From: Malacoraja senta
Lineage: Eukaryota
Length of the DNA: 64,000 nt
Direction of reading: 5' to 3'
NCBI GenBank assembly: GCA_038087875.1
Contig: CM075993.1
Span: forward strand, 434,001 to 498,000
In this document: in pieces, positions 16,330 through 64,000 of the stretch
How the letters are laid out: each line of letters starts with the position of its first letter
How positions within the stretch are numbered: the first letter of the stretch is position 1
Program-made: the position numbers and the translations under genes
The notes under the pieces: model-generated
The model's database searches: none
What the model was told of the DNA's origin: nothing
The model's input: only the letters and a program-made list of their open reading frames with translations

Positions 16330-16780
16330 CGTCGAATGGGCTTCATCGTCTCATACAGTTCCTATGGCAACGGGATCGGCGCCGGCGGTCGCTCAGTGCG
16401 CCTGCGTGGGTGTCGGCGGTCCGTCAGTGCGCCTGCGTGGGTGCCGGCGGTCCGTCAGTGCGCCTGCGTGGGTGCCGGTGGTCGCTCGGTGCTGTGGCCG
16501 TGTGGTGGGCGGGATGATGGCGGCGGCGACGGCGATAGCGCAGCTCTTGGCCGACCAGGAGGTTGAGGTCCATCGGCTCAGTCAAGTGATCGAGCGGCTG
16601 CAAAGTGAAGACGAGGAGTTGCTAGTCGGCTCGGACTTGCAGAGCCTCAGAGAGGAGAACGAGAAGTTGAAGTACCGGCGACTGCACCTGCAGCGGAGCT
16701 TGCGGGCGGAGATGGCGAGGGGCCCGGCCCCACACAGCGCCGGTCCTGGGCCCCAGGTAGGGCGGCAATTATCTGGGACA
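16330..16780 (+). promoter_or_regulatory. TARS3 CpG-island promoter with an RFX X-box-like site and a 31-bp tandem repeat carrying NRF1-like sites
   Basis: CpG-rich. GTTCCTATGGCAAC at 16358-16371. About 3.5 copies of a 31-bp unit starting at 16381, 16412 and 16443, each containing TGCGCCTGCG. Confidence 0.6.
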
Positions 16781-32286: not shown

Positions 32287-32603
32287 NNNNNNNNNNNNNN
32301 NNNNNNNNNNNNNNNNNNNNNNNNNNNNNNNNNNNNNNNNNNNNNNNNNNNNNNNNNNNNNNNNNNNNNNNNNNNNNNNNNNNNNNNNNNNNNNNNNNNN
32401 NNNNNNNNNNNNNNNNNNNNNNNNNNNNNNNNNNNNNNNNNNNNNNNNNNNNNNNNNNNNNNNNNNNNNNNNNNNNNNNNNNNNNNNNNNNNNNNNNNNN
32501 NNNNNNNNNNNNNNNNNNNNNNNNNNNNNNNNNNNNNNNNNNNNNNNNNNNNNNNNNNNNNNNNNNNNNNNNNNNNNNNNNNNNNNNNNNNNNNNNNNNN
32601 NNN
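32287..32603. other. Assembly gap (317 N)
   Basis: Run of N between TARS3 and TM2D3. Confidence 1.
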
Positions 32604-32628
32604 CAAAGATCTCGCTATAGGATCTTTG
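32604..32628. mobile_element. 25-bp remnant of the same family (left flank hidden in the gap)
   Basis: caaagatctcgctataggatctttg; its reverse complement begins caaagatcctatagcga, like the other copies. Confidence 0.65.
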
Positions 32629-32659
32629 CTTGTGCTTCCGCTCAGCATTGCAGCATCTG

Positions 32660-32778: not shown

Positions 32779-35700
32779 ATGGCGGCGAGGAAGCTTCTGC
32801 AGCGTCTGCTGCTGCTGGTGATGGCGGCGGCACTGGGAGCGGGAGCGGGAGCGGGAGCGGGAGCGGGCAGCGGTGAGTGCGGGGCCGGGGCTGCTCCTGA
32901 TGGCGGCGTTAATGGGAGCGGGAGGTGAGTGCGGGCCGGGGATCCGGACCCTGCCCGCGGTGGAGAACCTGGGCCCGGTCGGGGCGATGCGTTGGGCCTA
33001 ACCCCTTTACTTCTTGTCCTCAGAGTCTCCGAGTACCGGCGCCCCCGATGGCCTGCTCCAGTCCCGGGGCACCGGCATGCCCGCCGCCGGCGGCTTGGAC
33101 AGCACCCGCGCCCAGCCCGAAGTCGGTAAGTAAGCGCTGTGTGTGTGTGGCGGCCACGCCAGCTGGGAGCTCCACGTTCGCCGTGCCGCCGGTCTCCCTA
33201 CAATCACCATCTCTCTCTCCCTCCCCCCAGCGCCAACCACGCTGCCGCCCTACCTGGCGAGATGCCCGAGCGCCGGGCCGTGCAACAGGCTGCCGCCCGA
33301 CTGTGTCGACTGCTCGCTGCATTCTAACTGTGTCTACGGAAAGGAGGTTTCGTTCAACTGCACAGTCAAGCCAGGCGTACAATGCACGGTAAGTAACCGA
33401 TGCAACAAAAGAGGAATCTGGTAGATAGATCAGAGGAACAGGCCCTTCGGCCCACTATGTCTATGTCAACCCCACTTGCCAGCAGATTTTGTGTATGCCC
33501 AACCAGGCTTGGGGGCTTTCATGGCCTGCTGTTTATGTTCTTGTCTAGGTCAAGTAGTGCCAGAATTAACCTAAAATGTTGACTCATTTCATACACAATA
33601 ACTGATGTTTTGTGGCATTTTTTTCTTCTAATTATATTAAGGAACACAAAATTCTTAACAGCAAACTCGATCTGTTCAGCTTCTCGAGGTTCCCATGTGC
33701 AAATGGTTATTGGTTTTGTCTTTTTCCGATCTATTCTGCGTTTGTGTTTGCCTGTATGGGAAGCCAGCCTCCAGGTGTCTTGCCAGTATTCTTTACTCAG
33801 CTGCAAGTCAGTGCTACATGACTACAGCTGTTGAATCTTTCATTGTTTTGGGAGATAGTGGCAGTCTGTCAGGTCCCTTTGAGGATCTGTCAGAACCAAA
33901 CTAGTTCTATCTGGTTGTGTGACTAATATTGTGGCTACAAGAGTAGGTTTGATACTGGGTAACCCGCTGGTGTCCCAATGGCCTTCCACCATCTACGTCA
34001 GGATGTGATTACTTGCCAAGGCTATCCTGGCAGCAGCCTTCAAATCTGCAAGAAGAATAAGGGCAGCAAATGCACAGGATTGCGACCACCCACAAGTATC
34101 CTTCAGTTGCGCACCATCCTGACAACTCCACTGCTATTACTGTGTCTAAATCCTTGAACCTCTGCCCCACTGCAGCTGTTCATGTTAGTCTTAAAGGTAA
34201 TTAATGTTGGACAGTAAATACACTTTGCCAGAAAAATGCCCAGATCTGAAAACATAAATTTAAAAAAAATGTTTCTCAGCCTTTAGCTTCTAATGTAGCA
34301 CACTCATCCTTGGTGGAACATGGTTCAGGCATCTGGCAATGCTGCCACTCTGCACCCACCCCCAGCTTTGTAAATGAGACACTTGAATATTGAAACCATT
34401 CACAACCTTGGAGGGGAAAAAGGGTTAGGATTGCAGTGGTTTATCAGAGGTGATAACTGGAGCCCTACGAGGAGCATGGGAGAAAAACATAGCTACCATG
34501 GTGTAGATTAGCTGACTTTGCATGTAAAGTAATGGATTCTGGCGCATCAGTGACTTTGTTATCAATTATTTATTATTGTTCACATGTTTTTATTCTGTTT
34601 GCTACTCAGGATGAGAATAAGATAGAACAAAAAACATTTTGGATATCAATGGTCTGTCAGTTCTGTTGGCAGTTGCCTCCCACTCTGTACCAGTGCAAGG
34701 AAAGTACGAAATGCAAGACGGTGCGGTGCCCACGTGAATACTTTATTTCCAACTGCACAGCTCTGGAACATGTGCATTGTCTTGGTAGGTAGTCTTCGAA
34801 GGGGCAAACATTGGTGCTGTGTGATTTGTGTAGCAATGTTACAAAATTTTGAGATTTAAAAAATAAAGTCTGCAATTTATCCCATCAGATAAAGCATAAA
34901 AAGAAGTTTAATTTGACACTTAATTCACTTTCATATCTTCAGTATTAAAAAAGTTATGGCCATTATCATACTCAGAAATTAGCATCTAGTTCCCTATTGC
35001 TTTTCCATTGACTTAACACAAAAGCTGTGATCGAGGACAGTTAAAAGCCCATAACTTTCTTAAAAATTATGGTAACTGAAAGAAATTTTCAGGTATTATA
35101 GATTGAAGCATTCTGAAACAAATATGAAACAATCTTACTTCGAAGACATGAAAGTAAAGCATATAATTAGTTAGTTACCTAATTGTAGCTAATTACAAAA
35201 TTCAATTACTAGATCTAAACATCTATCAATTTCTTAAGAATAGGTTAACATTTTTAAATAGCCTAAGTGTCCAAATAACATTCACACAATAATTCACAAT
35301 ATAACATAATTTTTAAATCTAATTTTCATGAATTTACAGGCCAAATGGAAGGAATTGAATGTTTAATACCTGTAAATTAATGGGCATTTAATTCATCTTG
35401 CGAGTGAGAATTTCTGGAACGCGATCTTTTGGAACGTTCATTTGCGGTGAATTTAACCCCGTATTGGCATGAAAAATACTGCCGTTAATTCGGGGAATAA
35501 AATCACCGTGTCGCATGACAAAATGTGAATTAAAGGCTTCTTAAGAAGCACTTTTATACATTTAAAGAAAGCACTTTTGTTTACCTGTCCATTGTGTGAA
35601 ATCCGTCCCCGTTATTGGCGTTGACGCTTCAGGAGCTGCTTTTAAAATGACTGTAGCGCTGACATTGACGATTTAATTTTTTTAAAAAATTCACAAATCG

Positions 35701-38395
35701 CCGGTAGGAACGATTTTGTCAGCGAAGGTTTGTACTCCAACAAAATATTTCCAGGACAAGGGAGGAGAAACCGCGTTTTAACCCCGCCCCCCCCCTTAAA
35801 GGCGCCAAAATCGCGCACACGGCCAGTGGCAGAATTACAGCGCGACTGAAGGTAAGTTTTGTAACATACCTAATTTGTGTCCGTGCAATGACTTTATTCA
35901 AGATATGGATAGTTCTGCTATAATTCAATAGTTGCTTTCCTAAGAAACTGTTCATCATAGAAAATCCCTAACCCTGACCGAATATGTGGTATTCCCAAAG
36001 TCGTCAATGATTTATCCAGTTAGCCATATGGAAATACGTGAACCAATGGTTTAATAGATTTGGTGAAGTCCAAGTAGTTTAATCATTTAAATGTATTGGA
36101 CAGGTGTAAAAAATAACAATGTTGATTCTTATTTGATAAGCTATAATACAAAGGATTAAAATGATGCTGTAATAACTAATCAAAAGTCAGGTTAAGTTAA
36201 ATAGTTCTAAGTAGTGCATCCAGGAAGAGTACATTGGGCATTGAGGGAAGACAGTGTTGATGTACTAGAGCTGATAACTGAATTCAGGCACGGATTGCCA
36301 GGGTCATGTTCCCTGGCATATGAAGGTTTAATGACTGGATCAAAGTTACAAGTGAGGGAATACTGCTGGGATAAACAGAATCAACTATTTTGATTTTGGA
36401 AAGGCTTAAAAATAGGGGATGCAGGTGAAGAATTGAGACCACAATGGTTTTCAGCAATAACCGTAAACATTGCTGTGAACTTGTGGACCTTTTTCTACAA
36501 ACTGCAATTTATTGTGTAATTTGTTTATAATTTTTTTTTTTTTAATTGTTAAAACCTGATCGATTGCACAGGTCCTTGAGATGTGCCAACTCTTTTGCGT
36601 GGCTTTGTGCTCTGACAATTTGGTAAATATTGTCAATCAAATCTGGGCTGCATTTGACTGAGTGCTGCTGTGATGTCATGCGGTATTCCTCAGACCTCCT
36701 GGCGTCTGTACCGGGTCCACGTCCATCACTTATTCGTTAGGTTGGCACCAAGACTACTTTCACTGTAGTGATTTCTTGACCACTCTGACACAGACAAAAC
36801 ACACATAGAACACATCAAATGTAAATGTCTCGAAGTCTGAGATTTTGTTTTCTTTGTCAGGTAATCGCACATTTCAGAAGAAGATGTATTGCAATTGGAC
36901 AGGGGGTTACAAATGGTCAACTGCTTTGGCTCTGAGGTAAGGAAATATTTTGATTCTTGAGTGAGGATGTTTTGTTTTTAAACCTTTCTGTATGCTAGTT
37001 AATAGTCCCGTGGTAAGTAAGGTCGTTAAGAACGATTTTGGCCGTTTCTTGCATGAAATGCATCCCCCCAGGGATATCTGATTCTTCTGCCTCCACTCAG
37101 TCCCCACCGATCATCACCCCGTACCTTGGTAGTTATGGCCACAATGACTGGTGTTGAATGTAGAAAACTTTATAATTGGCCCTTTGATAGTTATTTCTGG
37201 AGCACTGATTGCATGTAAAGCCAGCATTTATTGCATTACATTAATTGCTGCATGAATTTAATTACTTGCCAGACTAGTTCAGAGGACAAAGATGTACGGC
37301 TGGAAAACTCTGATCAGTTAGAGATAATGTCTTGAGTCAATTACTTTAGGCCAGAATTGTAGCCTCATTTGCTTGGAGTGCATGGATTAGGTGAGGGTGG
37401 CAGTCTTGCTTCCCTGATAAAACATTGCCATTGCATTTTGCCCAAATCTGACAATTCTATAATGACAAATGGCAGCATTTGATTTCAGTGATTTATCTGA
37501 TTGTAATACTCTTAATATGTGAGCAGCAAGGGTTTGGAGTATTTAAATCTTTTGGAGTGTGGGATACTTACAAAAGGTTTCAGCTGAGCAAATGAGGGAC
37601 AGTGATAATATCGATTCAAAATTATTTTGATACAGTTCTATGGTCAGAATCAAAGGCCTGATTAGTTTCAATTGACCTGATTTTTTTTTGGGGGGCGGGG
37701 TTTGAGAGCTAATCTCTGGTGAGGGAACACATTTTGACGTGTTCATTTTGGATTGAGCAAAACAAAACTTTCATTGAAGCTGTGTGGTCTTTTTGACTGG
37801 CAGTATTTGCATTCCCAGTAACAAACCGTTCTCAATCTTTGCAGTAAGTCATAGGTTGTGTTATATGGTTGTTGTTTTTTCCCACTTAAGCAGATAACCT
37901 ACATGAACGCAGGCATTCTGTGGCTCTCTCGACTCATTCCAAACAGTGATTCATTATGTAGAACATTTGAAAATGTTCATCTGCAGCAAACTGTGTCATA
38001 TAATATCTGTTGACAGCGGGGAGTGGGTGGGAGGGGGAGACACTGGATCGTGATCAGCAGCTGGGCTTGGGTTAATCGGTAAACTTTCTTTTACCAGGAC
38101 ATGGGCTTGACTAGTATCTAAGAGCAGGTGTTGAACCCACACTTCTAACCAGTTTGCTATCATGTAGACATGTTCATTCTCATGCATATACTTTCTCTTT
38201 GCTTAACTGAAATTTTGATTTGATTTCAGCATCACTTTGGGAGGGTTTGGAGCTGACCGATTCTATTTGGGCCAATGGAAGGAGGGTCTTGGTAAACTCT
38301 TTAGCTTTGGCGGCCTTGGAATATGGACCTTGATAGATGTGCTGCTAATTGGGATTGGCTATGTTGGGCCTGCTGACGGCTCGTTGTACATCTGA
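32779..38395 (+). CDS. TM2D3: TM2 domain-containing protein 3, 6 exons, 256 aa
   Basis: Exons 32779-32872, 33024-33125, 33231-33388, 34610-34784, 36861-36936, 38230-38395, all GT-AG and in frame (771 nt). Encodes a signal peptide, a Cys-rich ectodomain (CNRLPPDCVDC, CQFCWQLP) and the TM2 domain YCNWTGGYKWSTALALSITLGGFGADRFYLG...GPADGSLYI*. Confidence 0.95.
34833..35870. mobile_element. Non-autonomous DNA transposon, about 1.04 kb, in TM2D3 intron 4
   Basis: Terminal inverted repeats GCAATGTTACAAAA ... TTTTGTAACATACC, flanked by TA on both sides; no transposase ORF. Confidence 0.7.
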
Positions 38396-42219: not shown

Positions 42220-45200
42220 TCAGATTACAAGCGGCTTGCTCCTCTCTACAGGTGTTTGGAATCCTTTAGTGCCGTCTGGTCCTCTGGGCATACGTACTAC
42301 TCCTGCAGGCAGCCCGCCTGCACTGTGCATCTTTCTAGAAAGCATGGGGCTGCCAACTGGAGTATTCTCATGGGATACCCCCTGCGCTTGCTTCCGTCTC
42401 TGTACCCAGGGGCTGCCGGACGGTGTGTTGCTGCTGTCCGATGAATAGTCCGTCCACTTACTTGCAACCTCAGCATTTGCAGGAGCTCCAAGCTTAGCAT
42501 CTGCAGTGAGCGGAGATTTGTGCGCAGCCGTATCTTTCCGTTGCATCGATGGGCTGGAACGCGGACTGTTCCACGGACTAGCTCGGGGAGAAGTGTTAGG
42601 ACTCAGGTGATTGTTTTTATAGGTGTTGGGGCTCAGCTGATTAATGGGTTTGGGTTTGCGGCCAAGCATAGGAGATGCAGGGTTGCTCTCTGGTTCAGAA
42701 GAGCTGCATGCTGAGGAATCTTCATATATATACTGCAACTCCTCCACTCGCTTATTGCTTGATTTGCTTTTCATCTCATTCTTGCCAACATCTTCAGCCT
42801 CTTTGTTCTTCTCTCTGACAACTTTCTTCTTTGGTGGTTTCATCTCTATTAGCACCACTTTCATTCCCCCTTCATCGTTTTTCCAAGTGATTCATGTGCC
42901 TTGATTGCAGATTCAACATTTTTCATACTCTACAATTACACAGTCCTTTGTTCCCAACTGTGAATAGCGATTGCCCAGTCTTTTCACATCTGCAGGGAGC
43001 TCCTTCCCTGGCTTTATAACACGAACAGAGATGACTGGACCAAACACACCAAATGCCTTCAGTACGTACTCCATTATCCTTTCTTGCAAGCCAGCATTTT
43101 CACATTCTAGATTATCATTTAAAACCTGGAGTTCTGGACACAGAAGCATATCATATACCAGCAGTATCTGACTTGGAAGATGCTCACTTGGGAAAACTGG
43201 AACGGCTGTCTTCCGTCTCACTTTTTTCCCTTCATCATTTAGTTTCCAAAAGGTCAGAGTACTTCAGAGCAAAGGCAGTGTTTGCCAGTCACGAGTGAGG
43301 TGTTTTACCTAGAACAAAAGATTCCATTTTATCCATGCCTATTCAACAGGAATGAACACCTGGACGATTCACTTAATTATAGTAATGAAATATCAAAGCA
43401 GTTAAACCATTGCAGAGGGAATAGACAGACGATGCTTCGGCTGGGACCTTTCTTTAGATTGAAGGAGGGTTGAGAATGCTGATAAAGAGAGATGGGGAGG
43501 GGGCGAGGCATTGCAAGTGATAAGTGGAAACAGACCTCCGCTCTGTTCGCAAAATCCAACCTGATCTCCTGGTGGCTCAGCACTTCAACTCCCCCTCCCA
43601 TTCCGAATCCGACCTTTCTGTCCTGGGCCTCCTCCATGGCCAGAGTGAGGCCCACCGTAAATTGGAGGAGTAGCACCTCATATTTCGCTTGGGCAGTTTA
43701 CACCCCAGCGGTATGATCATTGACTTCTCCAATTTCAGGTAGTCCCTGCTTTCTTCTTCCCAGCTCTCCCCCAGCCCACTGTCTCCGCCCCTTCCTTTCT
43801 TCTTCCCGCCCCCCCCCCCCCTCACATCAGTCTGAAGAAGGGTCTCGGCCCGAAACGTCGCCTATTTCCTTCGCTCCAATAGATGCTGCCTCACCCGCTG
43901 AGATTCTCCAGTATTTCTGTCTACGGTGGATACAGACGAGAGGTTTGATGGGCAGATGAGTGGAATAACTTAAAAAGGCTGGAGGTGAAGAGGAGACTAT
44001 CAGATAATAAGAAAGAAATGTATAGCTGGGAGGGATGTGGGGTGCACAGGGATGGGCGGCGGCCTAATGCAAGGCCTCTTTCCCATACTGTATCTGTAAA
44101 CTAATTTAGGCTATCTAGACTACTGAGCCTGTCCTGCCATTATCAAGATCGAGGCTGATCACCTTCCTCAGCTTCACTTTACAATCCACATCCCTCAGTC
44201 CCCTATTATCCAGAAATCAATCATTGTCATTGGAAAGAATATAGCCTGAGGATTCCACTGATTCACTATCCTTTAAGGTGCACTTTTTTGATAAACTGTG
44301 CTCCCCGATCTCGGACTCCTAAGCCGTCTGATGTCAAGCCCAGGAGCCCTTTAACTATTTTGTTTAGATCTGCTCTCATCATTGTAAATTTGAGATTATA
44401 ATCCACTCACCCTATTCTACGGCAAACATCCCACTTTTGGAATAGTCTAGTGAACCTTCACTAGAATTCCACTATGGCAACTATTTTCATTCTTAGGTGA
44501 GACAAAAACTAGTAAATATGGCGTCACCAAGAACGTATAGAACTGAACTGATTTTTTTCTGTATTCAAATCCTCCAAATACTGTACTACATTCCTTTTGA
44601 ATGACTCGCTGCACCGGCTCGATGTTCAGTTACTTGTGCAAGAGCAAACTTCAGTCTCTTTGAACATCCACACTGCCCAGTTCCTTACAATTTAAAACTT
44701 TCTCCAGTCTGTTTGAGCATTAAAATGGCGACCGCACATTATATTCCATCTGCCATGTTCTTGCCCACTCACCCAGATTGTTTGTATCATCTTGACCCTC
44801 TGTCTTCATTGCTCGATCTCACCTTGTTTAGTGTTGGATGTGAATGATTTGGATGTGGTCAAACTAGGTGCCTATGTGGCTGTTGGATGAAATGAGGGCT
44901 TTATTCTGTTTGAATACATGGTAGTGATAACATTAAATGGTTTGCTGGCCCATTGCAATGGAACACAATAGTTAGTCTAGGGGCTAGTTCAGGGCAAGGA
45001 GAATTAATTTCCTTCCTGAGGGCATTCATGAACCAGATGGGATTTTATAGCTATCATAGTGGTCATCAGACCAAGAACAGTTGTCCCTCCAAATTCTTCC
45101 TTAAATGCCAGTGGCATTATTCATTCATTGAATACATACTAGCAAAACAGTGTTGGATTAACTCAGCAGGTCGGGCAGCACCTGGTGAGGGAATGGACAG

Positions 45201-46301
45201 GTGACATTTCTGGACAGACCCTTCTTCAGGCTGATGGAGATGGGGGAGAAAGCCCCGACAAGTAATAGGTGAATACACATGAGGGGGGGGGGGGTATTGG
45301 CAGATGGGTGGATTATTAGTTTTGAAATGCAAGTACTATACCACAATAATCAACTATAGTTGAAAGTAGATGATTGGGACTTCAACGTTCTTTATCTATG
45401 TAATAATTCCCCATCATCTGACTTTGAGCAACCCAGCAAGTACAATAAGTCAGTGAGGGATCCATTCTACTAACTTATTGGTGTTAGTCTAAAGCTTCAA
45501 ATTAGCCACCGCCACTACGACACAAGACACGCCAAGTGTTGGTTTACAACAAAAAGAGAACATGGCTGGGTGACATTTCGGGTCGGGACTGTTTGGGGGG
45601 TAGGGAGCTGGAAGAGAGGAGGGCAGGGCAAAGCGTGGCAATAATATTAAGAAGGGTCTCGACCCGAAACGTCACCCATTCCTTTTCTCCAGAGATGCTG
45701 CCTGTCCCGCTGAGTTACTCCAGCATTTTGTGTCTATCCTCGGTTTAAACCAGCATCTGCAGTTCCTTCTTGCGCAATAATATTAATGTTACCTTTTTGA
45801 AAGAAGTCAGCAGTTTAACACTGACATAGCCCATCTTATTTCTTCTCACGTGTTTTAGTAGAAATGCATCGTTTTCCAGGTAGACATCAGACAGATAATA
45901 TTCAATCTGGGCAACAAGTTTCTGCACCAGCTCACTGTCCGGTGGCGCCCACTCCACCGCCAGATCATCTTCTCCACCGCTGCAACAGACAGACAGGGAG
46001 CGGATTAACGGAGCTCCGACCCCCGCCCCTCGCCCGCTCCCTCCCTCCCTCCATCCCTCCATCTCTCCCTCCCTCCCTCCCTCCATCCCTCCCTCCATCC
46101 CTCCATCTCCCCGCGGCCTCGGTACCTGTTTATCCCGGGCCCGGGAGCTGCCTCTTCGTCCGTGCCACTGCCCACGCTGCCGCCCTCCGGCCGCGCCGCC
46201 GGCTCCTCCTCGGCCGCCGCCACTTGGATGCGGACAAGCGGCGCGGCCTCCCCGGCCGGTACGGTCAGCGCCCCGGTGTCGCCGAGCGTTCCCCCCTCCA
46301 T
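42220..46301 (-). CDS. LARP6: La-related protein 6, 3 exons; exon 3 is disrupted in this sequence by four 1-nt indels (pseudogene or assembly error)
   Basis: Exons 46301-46126, 45979-45793, 43308-42220. La motif (QIEYYLSD..LENDAFLLKHVRRNKMGYVSVKLLTSFKK|VKHLTRDW), RRM (FGVFGPVISVRVIKPGKELPADVK) and C-terminal LSA motif (GVVRMPRGPDGTKGF). In-frame TGA codons at 43264-43266, 42913-42915 and 42892-42894 lie inside two short frameshifted segments. An alternative in-frame ATG is at 46505. Confidence 0.9.
43555..43925 (+). mobile_element. Penelope-like 3' fragment in LARP6 intron 2
   Basis: Nucleotide similarity to 14870-15250; hammerhead-like core at 43832-43859. Confidence 0.8.
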
Positions 46302-46559: not shown

Positions 46560-47880
46560 CCAATCAACCCGGCCCAACCCCAGCCTCATCCAGTCCAATC
46601 CCCAGCCTCATCCAGTCCAACCGCCAGCCCCATCAAACCCAACCTCCAACCCCCAGCCCCATCAAACCCAACCTCCAACCCCCAGCCCCATCCAGTCCAA
46701 CCCACAACCCCATCCAACCCCCAGCCCCATCAAACCCAACCTCCAACCCCCATCCTCATCCAGTCCAACCCACAACCCCATCCAACCCCCAGCCCCATCA
46801 AACCCAACCTCCAACCCACAGCCCCATCCAGTCCAACCCACAACCCCATCCAACCCCCAACCCTCAGCCCCATCCAGTCCAACCCCCAGCCCCATCAAAC
46901 CCAACCTCCAACCCCCATCCTCATCCAGTCCAACCCACAACCCCATCCAACCCCCAGCCCCATCAAACCCAACCTCCAACCCCCATCCTCATCCAGTCCA
47001 ACCCCCAGCCCCATCCAGTCCAACCCACAACCCCATCCAACCCCCAACCCCATCCAACCCCCAGCCCCATCAAACCCAACCTCCAACCCCCATCCTCATC
47101 CAGTCCAAACCCAGCCCCAGCCAGTCCAACTCTCCCAGCCCCCAGCCCCATCAAACCCAACCCCCAGCCCCATCCAACCCCCAACCCCCAGCCTCATCAA
47201 ACCCAACCCCCAGCCTCATCCAGTCCAACCCCTAGCCCCATCCAGTCCAACTCTCCCAGCCCAGCCCAGCCCCATCAAACCCAACCCCCAGCCCCATCCA
47301 GTCCAACTCTCCCAGCCCAGCCCCCAGCCCCATCAAACCCAACCCACAGCCCCATCCAACCCCCAGCCTCATCAAACCCAACCCCCGGCCCCATCCAACC
47401 CCCAGCCTCATCCAGTCCAACCCCAACCCCATCCAACCCCCAGCCTCATCCAGTCCAACCCCCAGCCCCATCCAACCCCCAGCCTCATCCAGTCCAACCC
47501 CCAGCCCCATCCAGTCCAACTCTCTCAGCCCAGGCCCCAGCCTCATCAAACCCAACCCCCAGCCCCATCCAAACCCCAGCCCCATCCAGTCCAACCCCCA
47601 GCCTCATCCAGTCCAACCCCAGCCTCATCCAGTCCAACCCCCAGCCCCATCCAACCCCCAGCCTCATCCAGTCCAACCCCCAGCCCCAGCCTCATCCAGT
47701 CCAACCCCCAACCCCATCCAACCCCCAGCCTCATCAAACCCAACCCCCAGCCCCATCCAACATCCAGTCCAACCCCCAGCCCCATCCAGCCCAGCCCCCT
47801 GTCCAATCAAACCCAACCCTGGCCCAACCCCCAGCCCTAGCCCAATCCAACCCAGCCCATCCAATCCCCGCCCCAATTTC
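46560..47880. repeat. C/A-rich modular minisatellite, about 1.3 kb, upstream of LARP6
   Basis: Shuffled modules CCCCAGCCCCATCAAACCCAACCTCCAA, CCCCAGCCTCATCCAGTCCAA and CCCACAACCCCATCCAA. Confidence 0.95.
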
Positions 47881-47955
47881 ATTGGAGAGGAAGAGTGTCT
47901 AAATGCCTCTTAAATGTTATTATTGCAGCTGATTCCAGCAGGTCTCTGGCAGCAC

Positions 47956-47980
47956 CAAAGGTCCTATAGCAGGATCTTTG
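47956..47980. mobile_element. 25-bp remnant of the same family with 8-bp TSD GGCAGCAC
   Basis: ggcagcac|caaaggtcctatagcaggatctttg|ggcagcac. Confidence 0.75.
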
Positions 47981-49341
47981 GGCAGCACGTTCCAGATATC
48001 AACCACTCGGGTCCTAAACACTCTGCCCTCAGTTCTTATTTAAAACTCCTTATATTCACCTTAAACCTATGCCTACCATTGGAAGTTTGACTTTCTATTC
48101 TCCGCATCCCAAAATATTGTGTACTTCTGTCAGCTCACTCTCGACCTCCTTCACTTCAAGGAAAATAGCTTATCCAATCTTTTCTCGTAACTCAAATCCT
48201 GGTCAATCTCCTCGATACATCTGCAGCGCAATCATATCCTTCCAGATGTGTGGTGACCAGAACTACGCACATATTTGCCAGAGCTTTGCCCACACATTCG
48301 TTTCATTGCTTCCTCATATCCTCTCCAAAATTTACTTTCCTTCATAAGTCCATGTGATAGGAGCATAATTAGACCATTCGGTCCATCAAGTCTACTTTGC
48401 CATTCAATCATGGCTGACCTATCTCTTCCTCTCAACCCCATTCTCCTGCTATATCCCCATAACCCCTTCCTATGGTACTTGGTATGGTACTTTATTTCTG
48501 TATGGTACTTTATCTATTTCTGTATCATCAGCAAATTTAACAACCATATCTTCAGTGACTGCATCCGAATCATTGATATGATTATAAAATGTCGAAGCCC
48601 CTGTACCAGTCAGTGGCACAGCATTCCTCAATCCTGCCATCCACGTATGCCTATTCACCAGCCATCCTTCATCCACACTATGTGTAGGAAGGAACTGCAG
48701 ATGTTGAAACCGAAGATAGTCACAATCCCTTCAATGGGGTACCTTTTCCAATGTCTTGGGAAATCTAATTTATCCTTTCCTTCTAATTCCTTATGCCTGG
48801 CTGAGATATTAATTTATCCTTTCTATTGAAGACCAAGGCAAAATATGTCTTATTAATTTACCATATCTATGGTTTCCATTACTAATTCTCCACTTGCTTT
48901 CTAAAGTACCAACATTTATTTTGTTAACCCTCATTTTATAACATCTTTAGACGCTCCTATTTGTTTTTATATTTCTAGTTTGTTTAATTTCATACTTTAT
49001 TTTCCTTCCTTAGTTATTGGTTTTAATGTTTTTTAGATAATGCCAAATCTTCTGATCTACTTGGCTTTGCACGTACGTTTATCTTAGGCTTGCTGCTATA
49101 TTTCAAGTTCAAGAATCAAGAATCAAGTTTCCTTTATTGTCATTCAGACCTTTCGGTCTGAACGAAATTGTGATGCCTGCAGTCATACACAGAACCAATA
49201 ATAACAAAACATACAATAAACACAAATTAAACATCCACCACAGTGAGTTCACCAAGCACACCCTCACTGTCATGGAGGCAAAGTCTTCGTCTCCGTCTCT
49301 TCCCTCCTTGTCTATATTTCTCAATGGAATGTGCAAGTAAT

Positions 49342-50957
49342 CCAGTCAAGTCAAGTGAGTTTATTGTCATGTGTCCCTGGTAGGACAATGAAATTCTTGC
49401 TTTGCATGAGCACAACAGAACATAGTAGGCATTTACTACAAGGCATTCTATAAATATATACACAATGGTCAATATACTGATAAAGTGCAAATAACAGTAT
49501 TGGCTAGTAAAGTTCAGTGTTATGTCCGAGCCAGGTTTAATAGCCTGATGGCTGTGGGGAAGTAGCTGTTCCTGAACCTGGTCGTTGCAGTCTTCAGGCT
49601 CCTGTACCTTCTACCTGAAGGTAGTAGGGAGATGAGTGTGTGGCCAGGATGGTGTGGGTCCTTGATGATGCTGCCAGCCTTTTTGAGGCAGCGACTGTGG
49701 TAGATCCCCTCGATGGAAGGGAGGTCAGAGCCGATGATGGACTGGGCAGTGTTTACTACTTTTTGTAGTCTTTTCCTCTCCAGGGCACTCAAGTTGCCGA
49801 ACCAAGCCACGATGCAACCGGTCAGCATGCTCTGTGTTCTGTTTCACAGAGACAAGGCTCACCCCCAGCTCCCCAGATTCAGCGGTCCAGCCTGAAGGTT
49901 TCTCCATCCATCGTATGGACCGTACACTGGCATCTGGGAAAGGGAGAGGAGGGGGCGTCTACCTCATGGTCAACTCTGCGTGGTGCTCAGACGTGGCAGT
50001 CCTGTCCAACTCCTGCTCTCCACACCTCGAACATCTGGCGGTGAAGTGTCGTCCCTTCTACCTTCCGAGGGAATTCACCTCCATCATCCTGACCGCGGTC
50101 TACATCCCACCCCAGGCAGACGTCCGTCTGGCACTGGGGGAGCTGCACGCCGTGGTCAACAAACACCAGACGTCTTACCCCGAGGCGTTCACCACCATAG
50201 CCGGGGACTTCAATAAGGCAAACCTAAAGAAATCACTCCCTAACTTCCACCAACATGTCTCCTGCTGCACCAGAGGATCAAACACCCTCGACCACTGCTA
50301 CACCACCATCAAGAATGCCTATCGCTCTATCCCTCGCCCTCACTTCGGTAAATCCGACCATACCGCGGTGCTGCTTCTTCCTGCCTACAGGCAGCAATTA
50401 AAGAGCGCACCCCCAGAGGTGAGGACAGTACAGAGCTGGTCGGGGGGGGGGGGGGGGGGCAGAGGAACAACTCCAGGACTGTTTGGAGTCTGTAGACTGG
50501 GCAATGTTCAAGGACTCGGCAACGGACCTGAACGAATACGCCACAGTCGTTACAGACTTCATTAAGAAGTGTGTGGAGGACTGCATCCCCACCAAAACCT
50601 TCCGAGCGTTTCCCAATCAGAAACCTTGGATGAACTTTGAGATCCGCACTCTTCTGAAGTCCAGACACCGGGCATTCATGTCTGATGATACAGTGGCCTA
50701 CAAGGAGTCCAGATACGACCTTGGTAAGGCCATCAAAAAGGCCAAAAGGGACTTCTGCTCCAAACTGGAGGAAGAGACTGATGTTCGGCGGCTGTGGCAG
50801 GGCCTGAATGCAATCACCTCTTACAAGGCGAAATCAGGAGGCAGCTCGAATGTCGGCGAAACATCACTCCCTGATGAGCTCAATGCGTTTTACGCACGCT
50901 TTGATAGGGAGAACACCGATGTGCCTTGCCGAGCCCCCATTTGCTGTGATGGTATTT
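49342..50957. mobile_element. Rex1/Babar-type LINE with 5' inversion (3' end on -, APE endonuclease on +), 8-bp TSD CAAGTAAT
   Basis: 49520-49828(-) encodes the post-RT C-terminus (LLPSGRRYRSLK...RNSYFP). 49834-50957(+) encodes APE motifs (CFTET, GGGV, AGDFN, LDHCY, SDH), with a frameshift in the poly-G at about 50442-50460. TSD at 49334-49341 and 50958-50965. Confidence 0.85.
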
Positions 50958-51648
50958 CAAGTAATGTGTGCTTCCATAACACAGATTGGACGTAACACGA
51001 TCGATGGATTAGGGAACACTATTTGTCTTCCGCGGGTCTATTTTGTCATAACACGATTTCGATTGGGAACTAAAAACCCACCAATAGTTACTTTGGAAAT
51101 TAAAAACTGCATTGGAAAATAAATGTTTCCATGTAACCACCCGGAAATAATCAGAAGCCGCTGTTATTTAAGGTTGTTGACACTGACAAGCAATCGCTTC
51201 TATTGACACTGCGATATCGCTCTAGGAAAGAATGTGGTATCCACCCATCACTTGCCCGACTTTGTCCCGCCACCACCTCTCTCCATCAGTCTGAAGAAGG
51301 ATCCCGACACGAACCCTCGCCTGCCCATGTTCTCCACAGATTCTGGTTGATTACTGCGCATCAGTGGTTACCTAGCGCAGGTCGGAGTAGAGTAGCGCTT
51401 AAACTTTGAAGTGGGCCTTTTTTTGAAGTGGGCCTTTTTTGACCAAGTTGAGGAGATCTAGTTGCTCAATCCCATTTTTAAATGACTTAACATCGGGAGC
51501 AGCGTGTGTTGGGTGGTAACCTATTCCATTCCCTTATCATCCTTGGGTAAAGGGGATATGTAGCAATTTAGCGAGTTGATGATGTAGGGACCGTTATTTT
51601 GTCATGTTTCATGGCAGTCGGTGCTCTGGAATGACGGGAGATTTTGAT

Positions 51649-51660
51649 CAAAGATCTTTG
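51649..51660. mobile_element. 12-bp palindromic remnant CAAAGATCTTTG with 8-bp TSD ATTTTGAT
   Basis: attttgat|caaagatctttg|attttgat (TSD at 51641-51648 and 51661-51668). Confidence 0.7.
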
Positions 51661-51942
51661 ATTTTGATGGCGTGATTTTGTGAATCTCCTTGTCCGACCC
51701 TGCCCGAGATACTACCCGACCCGCTGAGTTCCTCCGGCAATTCGTGTTTAGCATACAACCTTTAGTATGCTTTATTTTGCAGTAACAAAAATAAACTCAT
51801 AGCTATGAAAAAAAATTGCGAATTCCGAATGAAAAGCTGTAATTGAAAGCCTTAAGTTCCCTCGTTCCTCATCTAATTGTTTCTATAAGGCGAGGTTTAC
51901 GGGGAGCGCAAGGATTGTGTTAGCGCAGAACTACCTGCCTAC

Positions 51943-51988
51943 CAAAGATCTTATAGCGAAGCTAGAGATTAAAGATTAGAGATCTTTG
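51943..51988. mobile_element. 46-bp transposon remnant (P-like excision footprint) with 8-bp TSD CTGCCTAC
   Basis: ctgcctac|caaagatcttatagcga...gatctttg|ctgcctac (TSD at 51935-51942 and 51989-51996). Confidence 0.75.
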
Positions 51989-52049
51989 CTGCCTACTTTG
52001 TGCTTTCAGAAAGCTCCCCTTCACAATGTGCTGCACCCGGAGTGACCTA

Positions 52050-52400
52050 TCCCCCACTTGGCTGGCGGGCGGGCCGGACTGGGAGTCGCGGCCTGCGGGG
52101 CGCTGGGGAACATGAAGCGCGGACACGGCGAACAGCGGAAGTAGCGGTTGCTAGGGAGCCGGGGGGCGGCGGGGGTGAGCACGGTGCCGGCGGCCGCAGT
52201 GGGATCGGGAGGGGGACGGGGACGGGGACGGGGACGGTGCGGGACGGGGACGGGGACGGGGACGGTGCGGGACGGGGGATGCTGCCCGGCAAGTATCGGG
52301 CGAGGCTGCTCGGAAACCCGGTAGGTGCTGTGGGTATCCATGGAAACCCAACCCACGCCTCGCCCTTTGTGTGCGGTTCCGACCGGCGAGCCGCGTGTAT
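52050..52400 (+). promoter_or_regulatory. LRRC49 CpG-island promoter/exon 1 region with an X-box, an ETS-like site and a (GGGGAC)n tract
   Basis: CGGAAGT at about 52136; GTATCCATGGAAAC at 52334-52347 (X-box consensus); (GGGGAC)n at about 52212-52278. Confidence 0.6.
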
Positions 52401-56700: not shown

Positions 56701-59700
56701 AGCTACTCCAAGCCGTGAAACCAAGATGGATTGATGAAGACAATGTACAAATCATGATTCCATAGAATGGTAAAAGCAGATTGCAGGGGCTTGTGATTTT
56801 TTAAGGAATTTTGTTATCTCAAATCTTCCAAATAGTGCTGAATTGCTGACTCGTAGAAGTGGCTCATTTCTGGCTTCCTTGTTATTTATTTAGTTGGAGC
56901 ACCATTTGTTTGTATGTTAGCATGGCTTCAAATGTTCCAGTACAATGACCTTCTCTATATCCTGAGAAATGACCAAACCCTTTGTAAACTCCCAGGTGAC
57001 AATGTCATTTTCTCTGAGCTTCCTTCAACACCTGGAATACCAGTTGTATACCGCACACCCGAACAGCGGGCGGAATATGCAGACAGACTGAATCTGGACA
57101 GGTGAGTATGATTTTAAAAGATTGAAAGTTTAGATGGGCTTGTTGAGAAATGAACATAGAACAGTATAGTTCAGAAACGGGCCCTTTGGCCCACAATGTT
57201 TGTGCCGAACATTATGCCAAGTTAAACTCTCATCTGCCTGAACATGATCCATTTCCCTCTATTCCCTGCACTTCCATCTGCCTATTTAAAAGCTTCTTAA
57301 AGGTCACTGTCACCACCACCCTGGGCAGTGCATGCCAGGCTACCACCACTTTCTGTGTGATAGAACTTGACCGCACATCTCCATGAAACTTCCCCCCTCT
57401 CGCCTTATAGCTATGTCCACTAGTGTTGGACATTTCCACCCTGGGACAAAGGTTCTGACTGTCTAGGCCTCTCATCATTTTATATACTTCTATCAAGTCT
57501 CTCCTCAACTTCTGACGAACCAGAGATACCTATCTAAATCTATCCCTGTAACTGAAACCCTCTAATCCAGGCAGTGTTTGGGTAAACCTCCTCTGCACCC
57601 TCTTCAAAGCCTCCTCATCTTTCCTGTATTGGGATGACCAGAATTGCAAGCAATAGTCCAAATGCTACCTAATCCAAAGTCACAGAATTATACAGCAGGG
57701 AAACAGGCACCTTGGTCTAACTCATTCGTGCCAACCCAATTACTCCGTAAACTAATCCTATTTGCCTCTATTTCATCCATTCTCCTCTAAACCTTTCCTA
57801 TTCACATTCGTGTTCAATGATAAGTGGTCCCAACAATGTAATTAAGTTCATGAATATAAAAGAAAGTTAAAACGATACGATTATAAATTGAGAGCATTTT
57901 GCTGATATTTTCAGTTAAAACATCAATTTATTATCTTGTAAACTTAAATAAGGCAGCCACAACTGTAATGAAACATTGCCTAATTGAAGAAACGTGAATT
58001 AGTAGACAATTAAAAAAACAGCATTTGTATTGAGAGGAGTGGAATAAACCTTCCCTGAGCTGCGTCAGACTGAGTCCCAAGTCTGACAGGTTTTCAGTGA
58101 GGTGTCTACATTACAACGGAGCTACAGTGAATTAAGAAATTATAGCATTGTTCCCTTGGAACTACAGTGGGTAAATAAATGTAATTTTACATGGGTTACA
58201 AATTAACTGTTTTCAACCCTCCCAATATGAACTGTTTTTGAATGAACCATCACAAAATCTAAGCTCTGAAACCGTAACTCCCATATCATTGACAACATGT
58301 AAATTAATCCTTTCACCCAAGTCTTAAATGAAAACAGTTTATAAAAATGTCCTGGAAAATGCTCAGTGGTATTTTTGTTGCAGATTACACTTGTGATCGG
58401 GCATGTTCTGTAGCAAATACTTGAGCTATCTCTCGTACAGATTTAAATTGGAAGTTTTTAAATTTGTTTTTAATACTCATCTTTTGTTGAAATGGAATTT
58501 ATTCTACCATGCAAAACTTTACTTGCTGAATATCTAAGACATTACTTTCCATCAACAATTTAATATTTGTAATTATTGATCAGGCGAAATCTAACCGTCT
58601 GTCCAATACTGGAGGGTGAGCAACAACTTCGCTTGTTGAATTTCCAGCACAACCTCATCACGCAGATACAGCACATTTCCAACCTGCGCCGCCTTATCTT
58701 CTTGGACTTGTACAACAATCAGATCGAGGAAATCTCCGGTCTTTCTTCTCTGAGGTCACTCCGTGTGCTTATGCTGGGCAAGAACAGGTACAAAATCCTT
58801 GTTCGTGTATTCAGGCAGTAGATTGCTCTCTCATTTGATGAAATTATTGACTCAGCAACTTTTCCCAAATTCGTTTGAACTCTCTGACTCCAGCCAATTG
58901 AAAATGTCTTCCAATGTCTATTGAGTTCACTATTACTTCAGATTCTTAATGCCACATTTGGTGATATGATCTCTTGATGTAAGGACCTGTTATTCTCATT
59001 GTTTGGTCAAGATTGGAATGAGGTGACTTTTGCTCAGTTTTAGAGACACAAGAAACTGCAGATACAAATCAGGAAACAAAGTGCTGAGGGACTCAGCGGG
59101 TCAGGCAGCATCTGTGGACACTCAGTGTTTTGAGTCGGGACACCTTCAGACCGATGGGGTAGGCGGGGGAGAAAGGTGGAAATGAGAGGTGAGAGGTGAA
59201 GTAAAGCCTGGCAAATGATAGATGGATAGTGGTGAGGAGCTGATTGGCCGATGAGTGGAGTAAATCACAAAGGCTAAAGGTGATAAGGAAGCAAAAAAGA
59301 TTTTTGTTGTGATAATCTTCAGTCCATTTGAACACACTTCCCCCAATACCAGTTTAGTTTAGAGATACAGCGCGGAAACAGGCCCTTCAGCCCACCAAGT
59401 CCGTGCCGACCAGCAATCCCCGCACACTATCCTACACACACTAGGGACAATTTACATTTATACCAATCTAATTAACCTACAAATCTGTACGTCTTTGGAG
59501 TGTGGGAGGAAACCGAAGATCTCGGAGAAAACCCATGCGGTCACGGGGAGAACGTACAAACTTTGTACAGACAGCACCTGTAGTCGGGATCGAACCCGAG
59601 TCTCTGGCACTGTAACTCTATCACTGCGCCACCATGCCGCCGCTATAGGGCACTTTGTCAGATGTCTTCTAGGAATCCAAGTACACCACATTTACAGGTT

Positions 59701-62700: not shown

Positions 62701-63612
62701 GATCAGAAAACCTTGCCTGCAGGATGTGGCTTTCATTCATCCATTGCACATCACACTGAATTACTTGTGCTGGACAGGGCATCTGATGATTTGTATGTTA
62801 CAAATCAGCCTCTACCCACCCCTCCCTTATCTCATTACTGTAACCTGCTATTTTGTTTTTTCTTGGGATACATCTGCAGTTCTCACAAGTTTCATACTCC
62901 CAAAAGTTCCCTTTTTAAAACTGATATATAAATTAATAGGTCAAACCTGGAATTTGAGCACACCAAGCTACAATTTGTCAGTAGCCTCCTGGCTTGCCAA
63001 TCTATAATGAATTGAGATGTAGCAAGACAGATTACAAGCTTATTGTATTATAAAATGTGAATGTATGTAAACAGAGTAGGCGAAGATTTATCATTGTCTC
63101 GGCCCTCATTAGCACATCCAGTTTTGCCTTCAATGAAAACTTTGAACACTTGCTAATAATTAGTGGAAGGGAAGTTGTGTCCTGTTGCTGAGAGTCAGAG
63201 GCCACCAGCCAGTTAGAACAATCCCAGAGTAATAATCAGAGAGAGAGCGATGTGTCTGATTAAAGACTGGGCAGTCTGTGCGCCTGTTTCAGTACGGTCA
63301 ACTCATTTGCATAACTTTTCCATAAGACTGAGTTCTACTTTGTGTTTGGAGAAGAGTAATCATTATTTAAGAAAACCACAATGTTTTCCTTATGCTTTAC
63401 TTGTCAATGTTCTCATTTTTATTTGCCACCTGAGGAAATGTGAGTATTCAAACTATATTTATTAATAGATTTCGAGGATAGAGAACATTAACCATCTGAC
63501 TGAACTCCGCGTGCTAAATCTTGCAGGGAACCTCATTGTTCATGCTGAAAATATGAATGGTCTTGACTCACTAACAGAACTCAATCTCCGACGTAATCAC
63601 ATAGAATCTGTG
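52279..63612 (+). CDS. LRRC49: Leucine-rich repeat-containing protein 49, 5' part (gene continues beyond the window)
   Basis: Exons 52279-52320 (MLPGKYRARLLGNP), 54246-54317, 54941-55025, 55753-55920 (probable cassette), 56996-57101, 58584-58787, 60688-60754, 63469-63612; GT-AG with consistent phases. SDS22-type LRRs such as LRLLNFQHNLITQIQHISNLRRLIFLDLYNNQIEEISGL. Divergent from LARP6, as in other vertebrates. Confidence 0.93.
52525..52712. repeat. GC-rich minisatellite in LRRC49 intron 1
   Basis: Repeated GGGGTCACTGTCCG(G/A)GGG units of about 20 bp. Confidence 0.8.
52848..52928. repeat. (CCTT)n/(CCCT)n microsatellite; (ATCT)n at about 53753-53784
   Basis: Direct inspection. Confidence 0.9.
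55753..55920 (+). CDS. LRRC49: Probable symmetric (phase 1-1) cassette exon of LRRC49
   Basis: ttgttcacag acceptor, cag|gtattt donor, 168 nt, open in the frame set by the flanking exons (EITCHDDPHRHYSELS...LPYLP). Confidence 0.6.
59351..59641 (-). mobile_element. tRNA-derived SINE (HE1/V-SINE-like)
   Basis: Minus-strand head GGCGGCATGGTGGCGCAGTG (A box) ... GGGTTCGATCCCG (B box), central TGGGTTTTCTCCGAG...CCTCCCACA segment and CR1-like tail. Confidence 0.8.
62178..62622 (-). mobile_element. CR1 LINE 3' end, young (related copy at 20234-20625)
   Basis: (CATAGAAA)n tail and CR1 C-terminal coding region (RLRGDLIETYKI-like) on -; the two copies are very similar. Confidence 0.8.
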
Positions 63613-64000
63613 GTAAGTGTTATCCATGGCCCATTCGTTGAGCTGATTCATGATACTTGTCATTGTGTTCAACAACCTCGCTGTAAAAGACTGTGTTTTG
63701 TGATTTTCTTTAATTGATGATTTTTTCCATGAAGATAAAGTTTCTGTTCCGGCATATTTGTTTTATCCATTGGTAAACCAAGCCTCCTCCTGCTGCTTCC
63801 TCTGCTGCTAAGTGTTCATGTTGTTGGAATATTATCTTTATCACGTCAGAGACACCAATTATGTTGCTATCCACCTTCGCTGTGATTAGTTTTATGGATG
63901 GGTTCCTGCCGTCGACTTATTCGCCACACCCCACCTGTTATCTTTCAAAATCTTTGTACTCCCTATTAAACCGGTTGCTGTTTTCAACCAGTCAAGTGCC

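What the first reader, a model, noticed from the sequence alone, without database searches (positions are those of the whole stretch)
47948..51996. Family of 12-46 bp palindromic inserts with 8-bp TSDs near promoters: candidate P-element excision footprints in a cartilaginous fish
Seen: four inserts share ends CAAAG(A/G)TC...GATCTTTG. They are at 51943-51988 (TSD CTGCCTAC), 51649-51660 (TSD ATTTTGAT, insert only 12 bp), 47956-47980 (TSD GGCAGCAC) and 32604-32628. Two copies keep the same 17-nt end, CAAAGATC(C/T)TATAGCGA, before diverging. The 12-bp copy is what joining two ends through their internal AGATCT palindrome would give, and the 46-bp copy has filler built from micro-duplications. All four lie within about 0.15-1.7 kb upstream of the TM2D3, LARP6 or LRRC49 start codons, and I saw none elsewhere in the 64 kb. 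Established: P-superfamily (THAP9-like) transposases make 8-bp TSDs, have CANRG-type termini, favour promoters, and cut with a 17-nt stagger that leaves up to about 17 nt of each TIR between the TSDs after end-joining. Inference: these are scars of a formerly very active, promoter-targeting vertebrate P-element family that has remodelled promoters.
Basis: partly seen in the sequence, partly recalled or inferred. Interest (0 to 1): 0.85.

Follow-up and report, generated by a model that had tools for sequence, protein, structure and literature searches.

The report
Transposon excision scars near gene starts
Four tiny palindromic inserts next to three gene starts in this cartilaginous-fish DNA are scars left when a cut-and-paste jumping gene landed and later left. 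Their shape matches the unusual cut made by the fruit-fly P element, but the parent element was not found here.

Summary
Four inserts with ends CAAAG(A/G)TC...GATCTTTG sit at the stated coordinates. The three whose flanks can be read have perfect 8-bp direct repeats. Shuffled sequence gives about 0.04 such ends pairs per window. I found no other insert of this type in the 64 kb.

New evidence: contigs of two related species join 51934 to 51989. They skip exactly the 46-bp insert plus one repeat copy, and 8 letters fit both sides. That is an exact empty site, so this is a lineage-specific insertion followed by excision. The 47956 scar is shared with related species, and one of them keeps the consensus base.

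Retained ends are 8-9/16-17, 15/10, 17/9 and 8/8 nt, never more than 17. The junctions are blunt, microhomology-mediated or carry templated filler, as in published Drosophila P-element repair junctions. hAT and Mutator-type cleavage leaves no element ends at the donor site.

The best reading is therefore P-type excision footprints. Membership in the P superfamily is untested, because no parent element or transposase is in the window and the genome could not be searched. The promoter bias rests on four sites. "Remodelled promoters" is unsupported. First readers of this scan noted similar scars in other windows of the same genome.

The parts
32604..32628 (.). 25-bp footprint, 8-9 nt of one end joined directly to 16-17 nt of the other (CAAAGATC|TCGCTATAGGATCTTTG). 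It lies 150 bp upstream of the TM2D3 ATG, inside its CpG island. The left flank is masked (N), so the TSD cannot be verified.
47948..47955 (.). Left copy of the 8-bp target-site duplication GGCAGCAC
47956..47980 (.). 25-bp footprint: 15 nt of the left end (one substitution, G at 47961) plus 10 nt of the right end. It lies 1655 bp upstream of the LARP6 ATG, of which about 1.25 kb is a tandem repeat. It is also present in related organisms B and D; B has the consensus A at 47961.
47981..47988 (.). Right copy of the TSD GGCAGCAC
51641..51648 (.). Left copy of the TSD ATTTTGAT
51649..51660 (.). 12-bp footprint CAAAGATCTTTG: the two 8-nt ends joined over their shared GATC (4-nt microhomology). It lies 618 bp upstream of the LRRC49 ATG, inside a repeat-derived stretch (51210-51776).
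51661..51668 (.). Right copy of the TSD ATTTTGAT
51935..51942 (.). Left copy of the TSD CTGCCTAC. It is single-copy in organisms B and D.
51943..51988 (.). 46-bp footprint: 17 nt of the left end, 20 nt of filler with micro-duplications (TAGAGAT twice, AGATTA twice, AAAGAT shared with the arm), then 9 nt of the right end. It lies 290 bp upstream of the LRRC49 ATG at the edge of its CpG island. It is absent, together with one TSD copy, from related organisms B and D.
51989..51996 (.). Right copy of the TSD CTGCCTAC
32779..32928 (+). TM2D3 first coding exon (ATG at 32779); the TM2-domain exon is at 38219-38392. Context for the 32604 footprint.
45748..46301 (-). LARP6 exon 1 (ATG at 46301, La motif); the SUZ-C exon is at 42223-42891. 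Context for the 47956 footprint.
52279..52400 (+). LRRC49 start (MLPGKYR...). The exon end was not determined. LRR exons lie at 58573-58818 and 63469-63714. Context for the 51649 and 51943 footprints.

Best explanation
The four inserts are donor-site scars of one cut-and-paste DNA transposon family. Its ends read CAAAGATC(C/T)TATAGCGA, and there are at least two sub-variants, C or T at position 9.

Proposed sequence of events: each element inserted with an 8-bp target duplication. It was later excised by a transposase that cuts one strand at the element tip and the other about 17 nt inside the inverted repeat. The broken chromosome therefore kept up to 17 nt of each element end as single-stranded tails. 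Host end-joining then sealed the tails in one of three ways:
- directly (8+17 and 15+10);
- through a GATC microhomology (the 12-bp scar);
- after short templated synthesis, as in polymerase-theta-type repair (the 46-bp scar with filler).

This is the chemistry of the P-element/THAP9 superfamily, so the parent was most likely a P-type element.

Shown: the inserts, their TSDs, one exact empty site in related species, the retained lengths, and that one scar is older and one younger than the split from the related species.

Inferred: the 17-nt stagger, the repair pathways, the superfamily, and any preference for promoters.
For: - Sequence and statistics.
- Empty site: contigs of organisms B and D join 51934 to 51989, skipping 54 nt with 8 letters fitting both sides. 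Organism C breaks at 51942 and resumes at 52070 with 76 other letters, which is compatible with an empty site plus a diverged 73-nt stretch.
- Older scar: organism B's contig aligns across 47956-47980 and reads A at 47961, the family consensus.
- Arm lengths: 8-9/16-17, 15/10, 17/9 and 8/8, none above 17. The filler is built of micro-duplications.
- P-element properties: transposase cuts 17 nt inside the repeat, makes 8-bp TSDs and favours promoters (PMC7776569).
- Experimental Drosophila P{wa} repair junctions keep the TSD plus up to 17 nt of each end. They fall into the same blunt, microhomology and templated-insertion classes (PMC2895639).
- hAT, Transib and MULE transposases form hairpins on the flanking DNA and so leave no element ends (PMC5499845). 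Tol2 footprints are precise or small indels (PMC3553969).
- Unchecked first-reader notes report THAP-bearing P-like elements and other 8-bp-TSD remnants, one of them 17+17, elsewhere in this genome.
Against: - No parent element or transposase is in the window and none could be fetched, so superfamily membership is untested.
- The true length of the inverted repeat is unknown. The left arm of the 46-bp scar could be longer than 17 nt if what I call filler is really element sequence.
- Only eight arms were measured.
- CAAAG fits the hAT terminus rule as well as the P rule (my own knowledge of Repbase classification).
- The ends do not resemble the zebrafish Pdre2 repeat CATACCTGTCAAC.
- The cleavage chemistry of other 8-bp-TSD superfamilies, such as Zisupton, is unknown to me.
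- Whether the 12-bp scar arose at this locus could not be told from the reads, because it sits inside repeat-derived sequence.
Confidence: 0.7

Rival explanations
1. The scars come from a non-P transposon family with 8-bp TSDs, either hAT or a superfamily whose chemistry is unknown (for example Zisupton). The short retained ends would then arise from aborted gap repair copied from a sister copy, or from an uncharacterised staggered cut.
For: An 8-bp TSD and the terminus CAAAG also fit hAT (own knowledge). A follow-up note of this scan reports hAT MITEs copied hundreds to thousands of times in this genome (unchecked). No transposase links these ends to P.
Against: hAT and MULE cleavage leaves hairpinned flanks and no element ends. 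Vertebrate Tol2 footprints are precise or small indels. Aborted gap repair gives retained tracts of widely varying length, often hundreds of bp. Here all eight arms are 17 nt or less and two reach 16-17.
Confidence: 0.2
2. The inserts are tiny non-autonomous elements (micro-MITEs) that inserted as they are and never excised.
For: They have inverted ends and TSDs, as any MITE does.
Against: The four copies differ in length (12, 25, 25, 46 bp) and in their internal junction, so they are not copies of one master. A 12-bp insert is only the two 8-nt tips overlapped. From established knowledge of P elements, transposase binding sites lie inside the ends, so such stubs should not be mobile.
Confidence: 0.05
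3. Chance palindromes or an assembly or library artefact.
For: One copy abuts an N run.
Against: 0.04 are expected by chance and 0-0.1 for TSD-flanked palindromes. A contig of a same-species run carries the 46-bp insert, though it may come from the assembled sample. A related species carries the 47956 scar, and two related species show an exact empty site.
Confidence: 0.01

Closest known systems
Drosophila melanogaster P-element excision footprints (P{wa} repair junctions, PMC2895639; mechanism review PMC7776569)
   Same: An 8-bp TSD is kept on both sides. Up to 17 nt of each inverted repeat is retained between them. Junctions are blunt, microhomology-mediated, or carry short templated AT-rich filler. 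Insertions lie near promoters.
   Different: The end sequence differs (CATGATGAAATAACATA in the fly, CAAAGATCYTATAGCGA here). The host is a cartilaginous fish. These are fixed natural scars, not laboratory events. The transposase is unknown here.
Zebrafish Pdre2 / zfTHAP9 P-like transposon (PMC10983969)
   Same: A vertebrate P-superfamily element with 8-bp TSDs and internally deleted copies.
   Different: The Pdre2 repeat is 13 bp (CATACCTGTCAAC) and unrelated in sequence. Excision by zfTHAP9 in cells gave larger flanking deletions, and the passages I read describe no 17-nt-limited footprints.
hAT elements such as Tol2, Ac and Hermes (PMC3553969, PMC5499845)
   Same: An 8-bp TSD and a CA-type terminus. 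hAT MITEs are reported as abundant in this genome by another note.
   Different: hAT excision makes hairpins on the flanking DNA. Its footprints are altered TSD junctions or precise restorations, not 8-17 nt of both element ends.

Membership tests
P superfamily (P element / THAP9-like DNA transposons) | Target-site duplication of 8 bp (7-8) | tested here: met
   Perfect 8-bp repeats flank all three inserts whose flanks are readable. The empty site in two related species has a single copy.
P superfamily (P element / THAP9-like DNA transposons) | Donor cleavage staggered by 17 nt, so that at most 17 nt of each end stays at the donor site | tested here: met
   Arms are 8-9/16-17, 15/10, 17/9 and 8/8, none above 17. 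Caveat: there are only eight arms and the parent repeat is unknown, so one arm is 'at least 17'.
P superfamily (P element / THAP9-like DNA transposons) | Transposase with an N-terminal THAP domain and an RNase-H-like catalytic domain carrying a GTP-binding insertion | not testable with these tools
   No element body is in the window and the genome is not searchable here. THAP-bearing P-like elements elsewhere in this genome are reported only in unchecked notes.
P superfamily (P element / THAP9-like DNA transposons) | Inverted terminal repeats with a 5'-CA terminus, plus subterminal transposase-binding sites and inverted repeats | tested here: inconclusive
   The terminus CAAAG is present and the ends are inverted over at least 17 nt. 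This also fits hAT. Subterminal sites cannot be seen in footprints.
P superfamily (P element / THAP9-like DNA transposons) | Insertion preference for promoters and open chromatin | tested here: inconclusive
   All 4 scars lie within 1.7 kb upstream of 3 of the 4 gene starts in the window. Two are inside CpG islands. Roughly 10% of the window lies within 1.7 kb upstream of a gene start, but the sample is small and the threshold was chosen after the fact.
hAT superfamily | 8-bp TSD and a YARNG-type terminus | tested here: met
   That CAAAG fits YARNG is my own knowledge.
hAT superfamily | Excision through hairpins on the flanking DNA, leaving footprints without element-end sequence | tested here: not met
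   Every scar keeps 8-17 nt of both element ends. The hAT chemistry is described.
MITE (mobile miniature element) | Many near-identical copies of one short unit | tested here: not met
   The four copies have lengths 12, 25, 25 and 46 bp with four different internal junctions.

The most novel reading that the evidence does not exclude
A P-superfamily transposon family was active in this cartilaginous-fish lineage both before and after its split from sister species, and preferentially hit CpG-island promoters. Its fixed scars would be a natural record that the odd 17-nt staggered donor cut of the fly P transposase is conserved in vertebrate P transposases. An active or recently active vertebrate P element may therefore still exist in these genomes.
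Probability: 0.4. Interest if true: 0.7.

Novelty: new member of a known kind. Interest (0 to 1): 0.55.

Why it matters
I found no description of P-type transposons in cartilaginous fish in the searchable literature. In the papers I read, the 17-nt staggered cut is documented only for the fly enzyme.

A family of fixed scars with a hard 17-nt limit would show that this cleavage geometry is old and conserved. It would also give a simple sequence signature for counting past excisions, and so past activity and target preference, in any genome.

The lineage-specific insertion and excision beside LRRC49 shows that these events add tens of base pairs to promoter-proximal DNA and differ between sister species. 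That makes a regulatory effect testable, but none is shown.

Tried and rejected
- I looked for a longer element with these ends in the window, using the 17-mer with up to 3 mismatches and 8-mer ends with up to 1 mismatch plus a TSD at spans up to 6 kb. Only the footprints came back.
- I looked for footprints of other families, meaning any CA...TG palindromic insert with an 8-bp TSD. There were none.
- I listed the window's ORFs of 140 aa or more and scanned eight ORFs from the gene and LINE-like regions against Pfam. The hits were LARP6 domains (La, SUZ-C), a weak anticodon-binding match and a weak LINE endonuclease match; none looked like a transposase.
- The end sequences give only two chance primer hits in the literature.
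- A search for CANRG and YARNG found nothing relevant.
- The scan's own index gave nothing by sequence. By words it gave only titles, with no sequences.
- I did not scan the metagenome or viral collections for the 17-mer. Chance hits would outnumber any fish DNA there.
- I could not obtain a P-transposase query from any tool, so no protein search for the parent was run.
- Whether the 12-bp scar is present or absent in the related species could not be decided. Contigs break in the surrounding repeat.
Full report
**What is there**

The four inserts are exactly as reported.

| Copy | Coordinates | Sequence or structure | TSD |
|---|---|---|---|
| C | 32604-32628 | CAAAGATC joined to TCGCTATAGGATCTTTG | not checkable |
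| B | 47956-47980 | CAAAGGTCCTATAGC joined to AGGATCTTTG | GGCAGCAC |
| D | 51649-51660 | CAAAGATCTTTG | ATTTTGAT |
| A | 51943-51988 | 46 bp (arms and filler described below) | CTGCCTAC |

The left flank of copy C is the masked run 32287-32603. I did not try to fill it.

The ends pattern has 5 strand-matches against 0.04 expected by shuffling. It misses the 12-bp copy, whose ends overlap. Searches found that copy.

The 17-nt end CAAAGATC(C/T)TATAGCGA is exact in two copies.

My own scans looked for any short CA...TG palindromic insert flanked by an 8-bp repeat, exact or with one mismatch. They return only these inserts, and Markov-shuffled sequence gives 0 to 0.1. Four other isolated CAAAGATC 8-mers match the chance expectation of about 3. 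No longer element with these ends is in the window.

**Gene context**

The window holds four gene starts.

- A TARS3-like gene runs on the plus strand from about 16.4 to 31.3 kb. It was named from ORF similarity that I recognise and a weak anticodon-domain hit.
- TM2D3 is on the plus strand, with its ATG at 32779 and its TM2-domain exon at 38219-38392.
- LARP6 is on the minus strand, with its ATG at 46301. La and SUZ-C domains support the name.
- LRRC49 is on the plus strand, with its ATG at 52279 and LRR exons at 58.6 and 63.5 kb.

CpG-island-like windows lie at 16.2-16.8, 19.0-19.4, 32.4-33.4, 45.8-46.6 and 51.8-52.8 kb, among others.

The scars lie 150 bp, 1655 bp, 618 bp and 290 bp upstream of the TM2D3, LARP6 and LRRC49 start codons. 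About 1.25 kb of the LARP6 distance is a C-rich tandem repeat.

Roughly 10% of the window lies within 1.7 kb upstream of one of the four starts. Four of four sites, or three of three loci, is therefore suggestive: about 1e-4 to 1e-3 if placement were uniform. The threshold was chosen after the fact, the sample is tiny, and the TARS3-like island has no scar.

**Cross-species evidence (new)**

Public runs of the same species (organism A) and of related species (organisms B, C and D; names are coded) were laid on the region. Pieces of the related species' contigs carry roughly 2-9 other letters per 100.

In B and D, one contig each joins 51934 directly to 51989. Exactly 54 nt are skipped and 8 letters fit either side, with more than 200 nt of flank on each side. 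That is an exact empty site with one copy of CTGCCTAC.

In C, the contig runs through 51942 and resumes at 52070 with 76 other letters. This is what an empty site followed by a diverged 73-nt stretch would give, but it is not proof.

So the 46-bp insert and its duplication arose in A's lineage after the split. An element inserted, made an 8-bp duplication and left again.

By contrast, B's contig aligns across 47956-47980 and reads A at 47961. That is the consensus CAAAGATC, where the window has G. D also covers the site. This scar therefore predates the split, and the G is a later substitution.

The family was thus active over a period that spans these speciations.

A same-species contig reproduces 51683-52200 with one difference. 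It may be from the assembled sample.

The status of the 12-bp scar in the relatives could not be read. It lies in repeat-derived sequence where contigs break.

**Anatomy of the scars**

Arm lengths were measured against the 17-nt end.

| Copy | Left arm | Right arm | Junction |
|---|---|---|---|
| C (32604) | 8-9 nt | 16-17 nt | no filler |
| B (47956) | 15 nt, one substitution | 10 nt | no filler |
| D (51649) | 8 nt | 8 nt | arms overlap on GATC |
| A (51943) | 17 nt | 9 nt | 20 nt of filler |

The filler in copy A is made of micro-duplications: TAGAGAT twice, AGATTA twice, and AAAGAT shared with the arm.

No arm exceeds 17 nt and two reach 16-17.

Position 9 is C in copies C and B and T in copy A. 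At least two sub-variants were therefore mobile.

**Mechanism**

P-element transposase cuts the 3' strand at the element tip and the other strand 17 bp inside the repeat. This leaves 17-nt 3' tails. It makes 8-bp duplications and favours promoters and origins (PMC7776569).

The tables of sequenced Drosophila P{wa} donor junctions show the 8-bp target on both sides with up to 17 nt of each end between them. The junctions are blunt, use 1-10 nt microhomologies, or carry templated insertions made of short repeated runs (PMC2895639). The four scars here fall into these same classes.

The other well-studied superfamilies with long duplications (hAT, Mutator-like, Transib) cleave through hairpins on the flanking DNA. 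They therefore leave no element ends at the donor (PMC5499845). Tol2 footprints in zebrafish are precise or small indels (PMC3553969).

I therefore read the inserts as P-type excision footprints repaired by end joining. The TSDs, the empty site and the arm lengths are observed. The 17-nt cut, the repair route and the superfamily are inferred.

**Limits**

- No parent element or transposase is in the window, and none of the available collections holds this genome. Membership in the P superfamily is untested.
- The terminus CAAAG fits the hAT rule as well as the P rule (my own knowledge).
- The ends do not resemble the zebrafish Pdre2 repeat.
- The left arm of the 46-bp scar is 'at least 17', because the parent repeat is unknown.
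- 'Very active', genome-wide promoter targeting and 'remodelled promoters' are not supported by anything I could test.

**Earlier notes of this scan**

First readers of other windows of the same genome recorded similar remnants with 8-bp duplications:

- a 31-bp palindrome;
- 36-37-bp double-ended elements;
- a 17+17 remnant;
- a 36-bp remnant joining two end types.

They also recorded several THAP-bearing P-like elements, one with 31-bp repeats. These are unchecked titles without sequences. They are leads that fit this reading, not support. One follow-up note reports abundant hAT MITEs and calls the animal a skate.

**Verdict**

The mechanism is P-like with good support, and family membership remains open. 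This is a new member of a known kind. It is a tidy natural record of P-type excision in a cartilaginous fish, of moderate interest.

Noticed in passing
window 49105-50957: A stretch of about 1.85 kb holding LINE-like ORFs (weak endonuclease-reverse-transcriptase hit) is skipped by contigs of related organisms B, C and D, which join 49104 to 50958. It is therefore a lineage-specific retrotransposon insertion between LARP6 and LRRC49.
   Followed up: partly
window 46572-47819: A 1.25-kb C-rich tandem array (units of about 22, 39 and 68 bp, CCAACCCCCAGCCCCATCCAG-like) lies directly upstream of the LARP6 CpG island. It gives long spurious ORFs on both strands.
   Followed up: no
window 46037-46104: A (CTCC)17 microsatellite sits inside LARP6 exon 1. 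The N-terminal part (MEGGT..., from the ATG at 46301) and the La-motif part are in different frames across it. This means a small intron, a length polymorphism or an assembly slip.
   Followed up: no
window 51210-51776: Contigs in all four runs join 51209/51210 to 51777. This 567-bp stretch is therefore a repeat inserted into another, moderately repeated element. It contains a very abundant 43-nt segment (51707-51749) and the 12-bp footprint.
   Followed up: partly
window 16200-16800: The CpG island and first coding exon of a TARS3-like gene, with a coiled-coil N-terminus (ORF at 16364-16867) and C-terminal exons near 30.4-31.3 kb. This is the only promoter-like island of the four genes without a footprint.
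   Followed up: no
window 32630-32637 and 51998-52005: The 8-mer TTGTGCTT lies just right of two footprints. It starts 2 nt after the 32604 scar and 2 nt after the right TSD of the 51943 scar. It may be chance and was not tested.
   Followed up: no
window 47900-48181: Organism B's contig has a net 17 extra letters somewhere in this stretch, which holds the 47956 footprint. Where they lie was not shown in the output.
   Followed up: no
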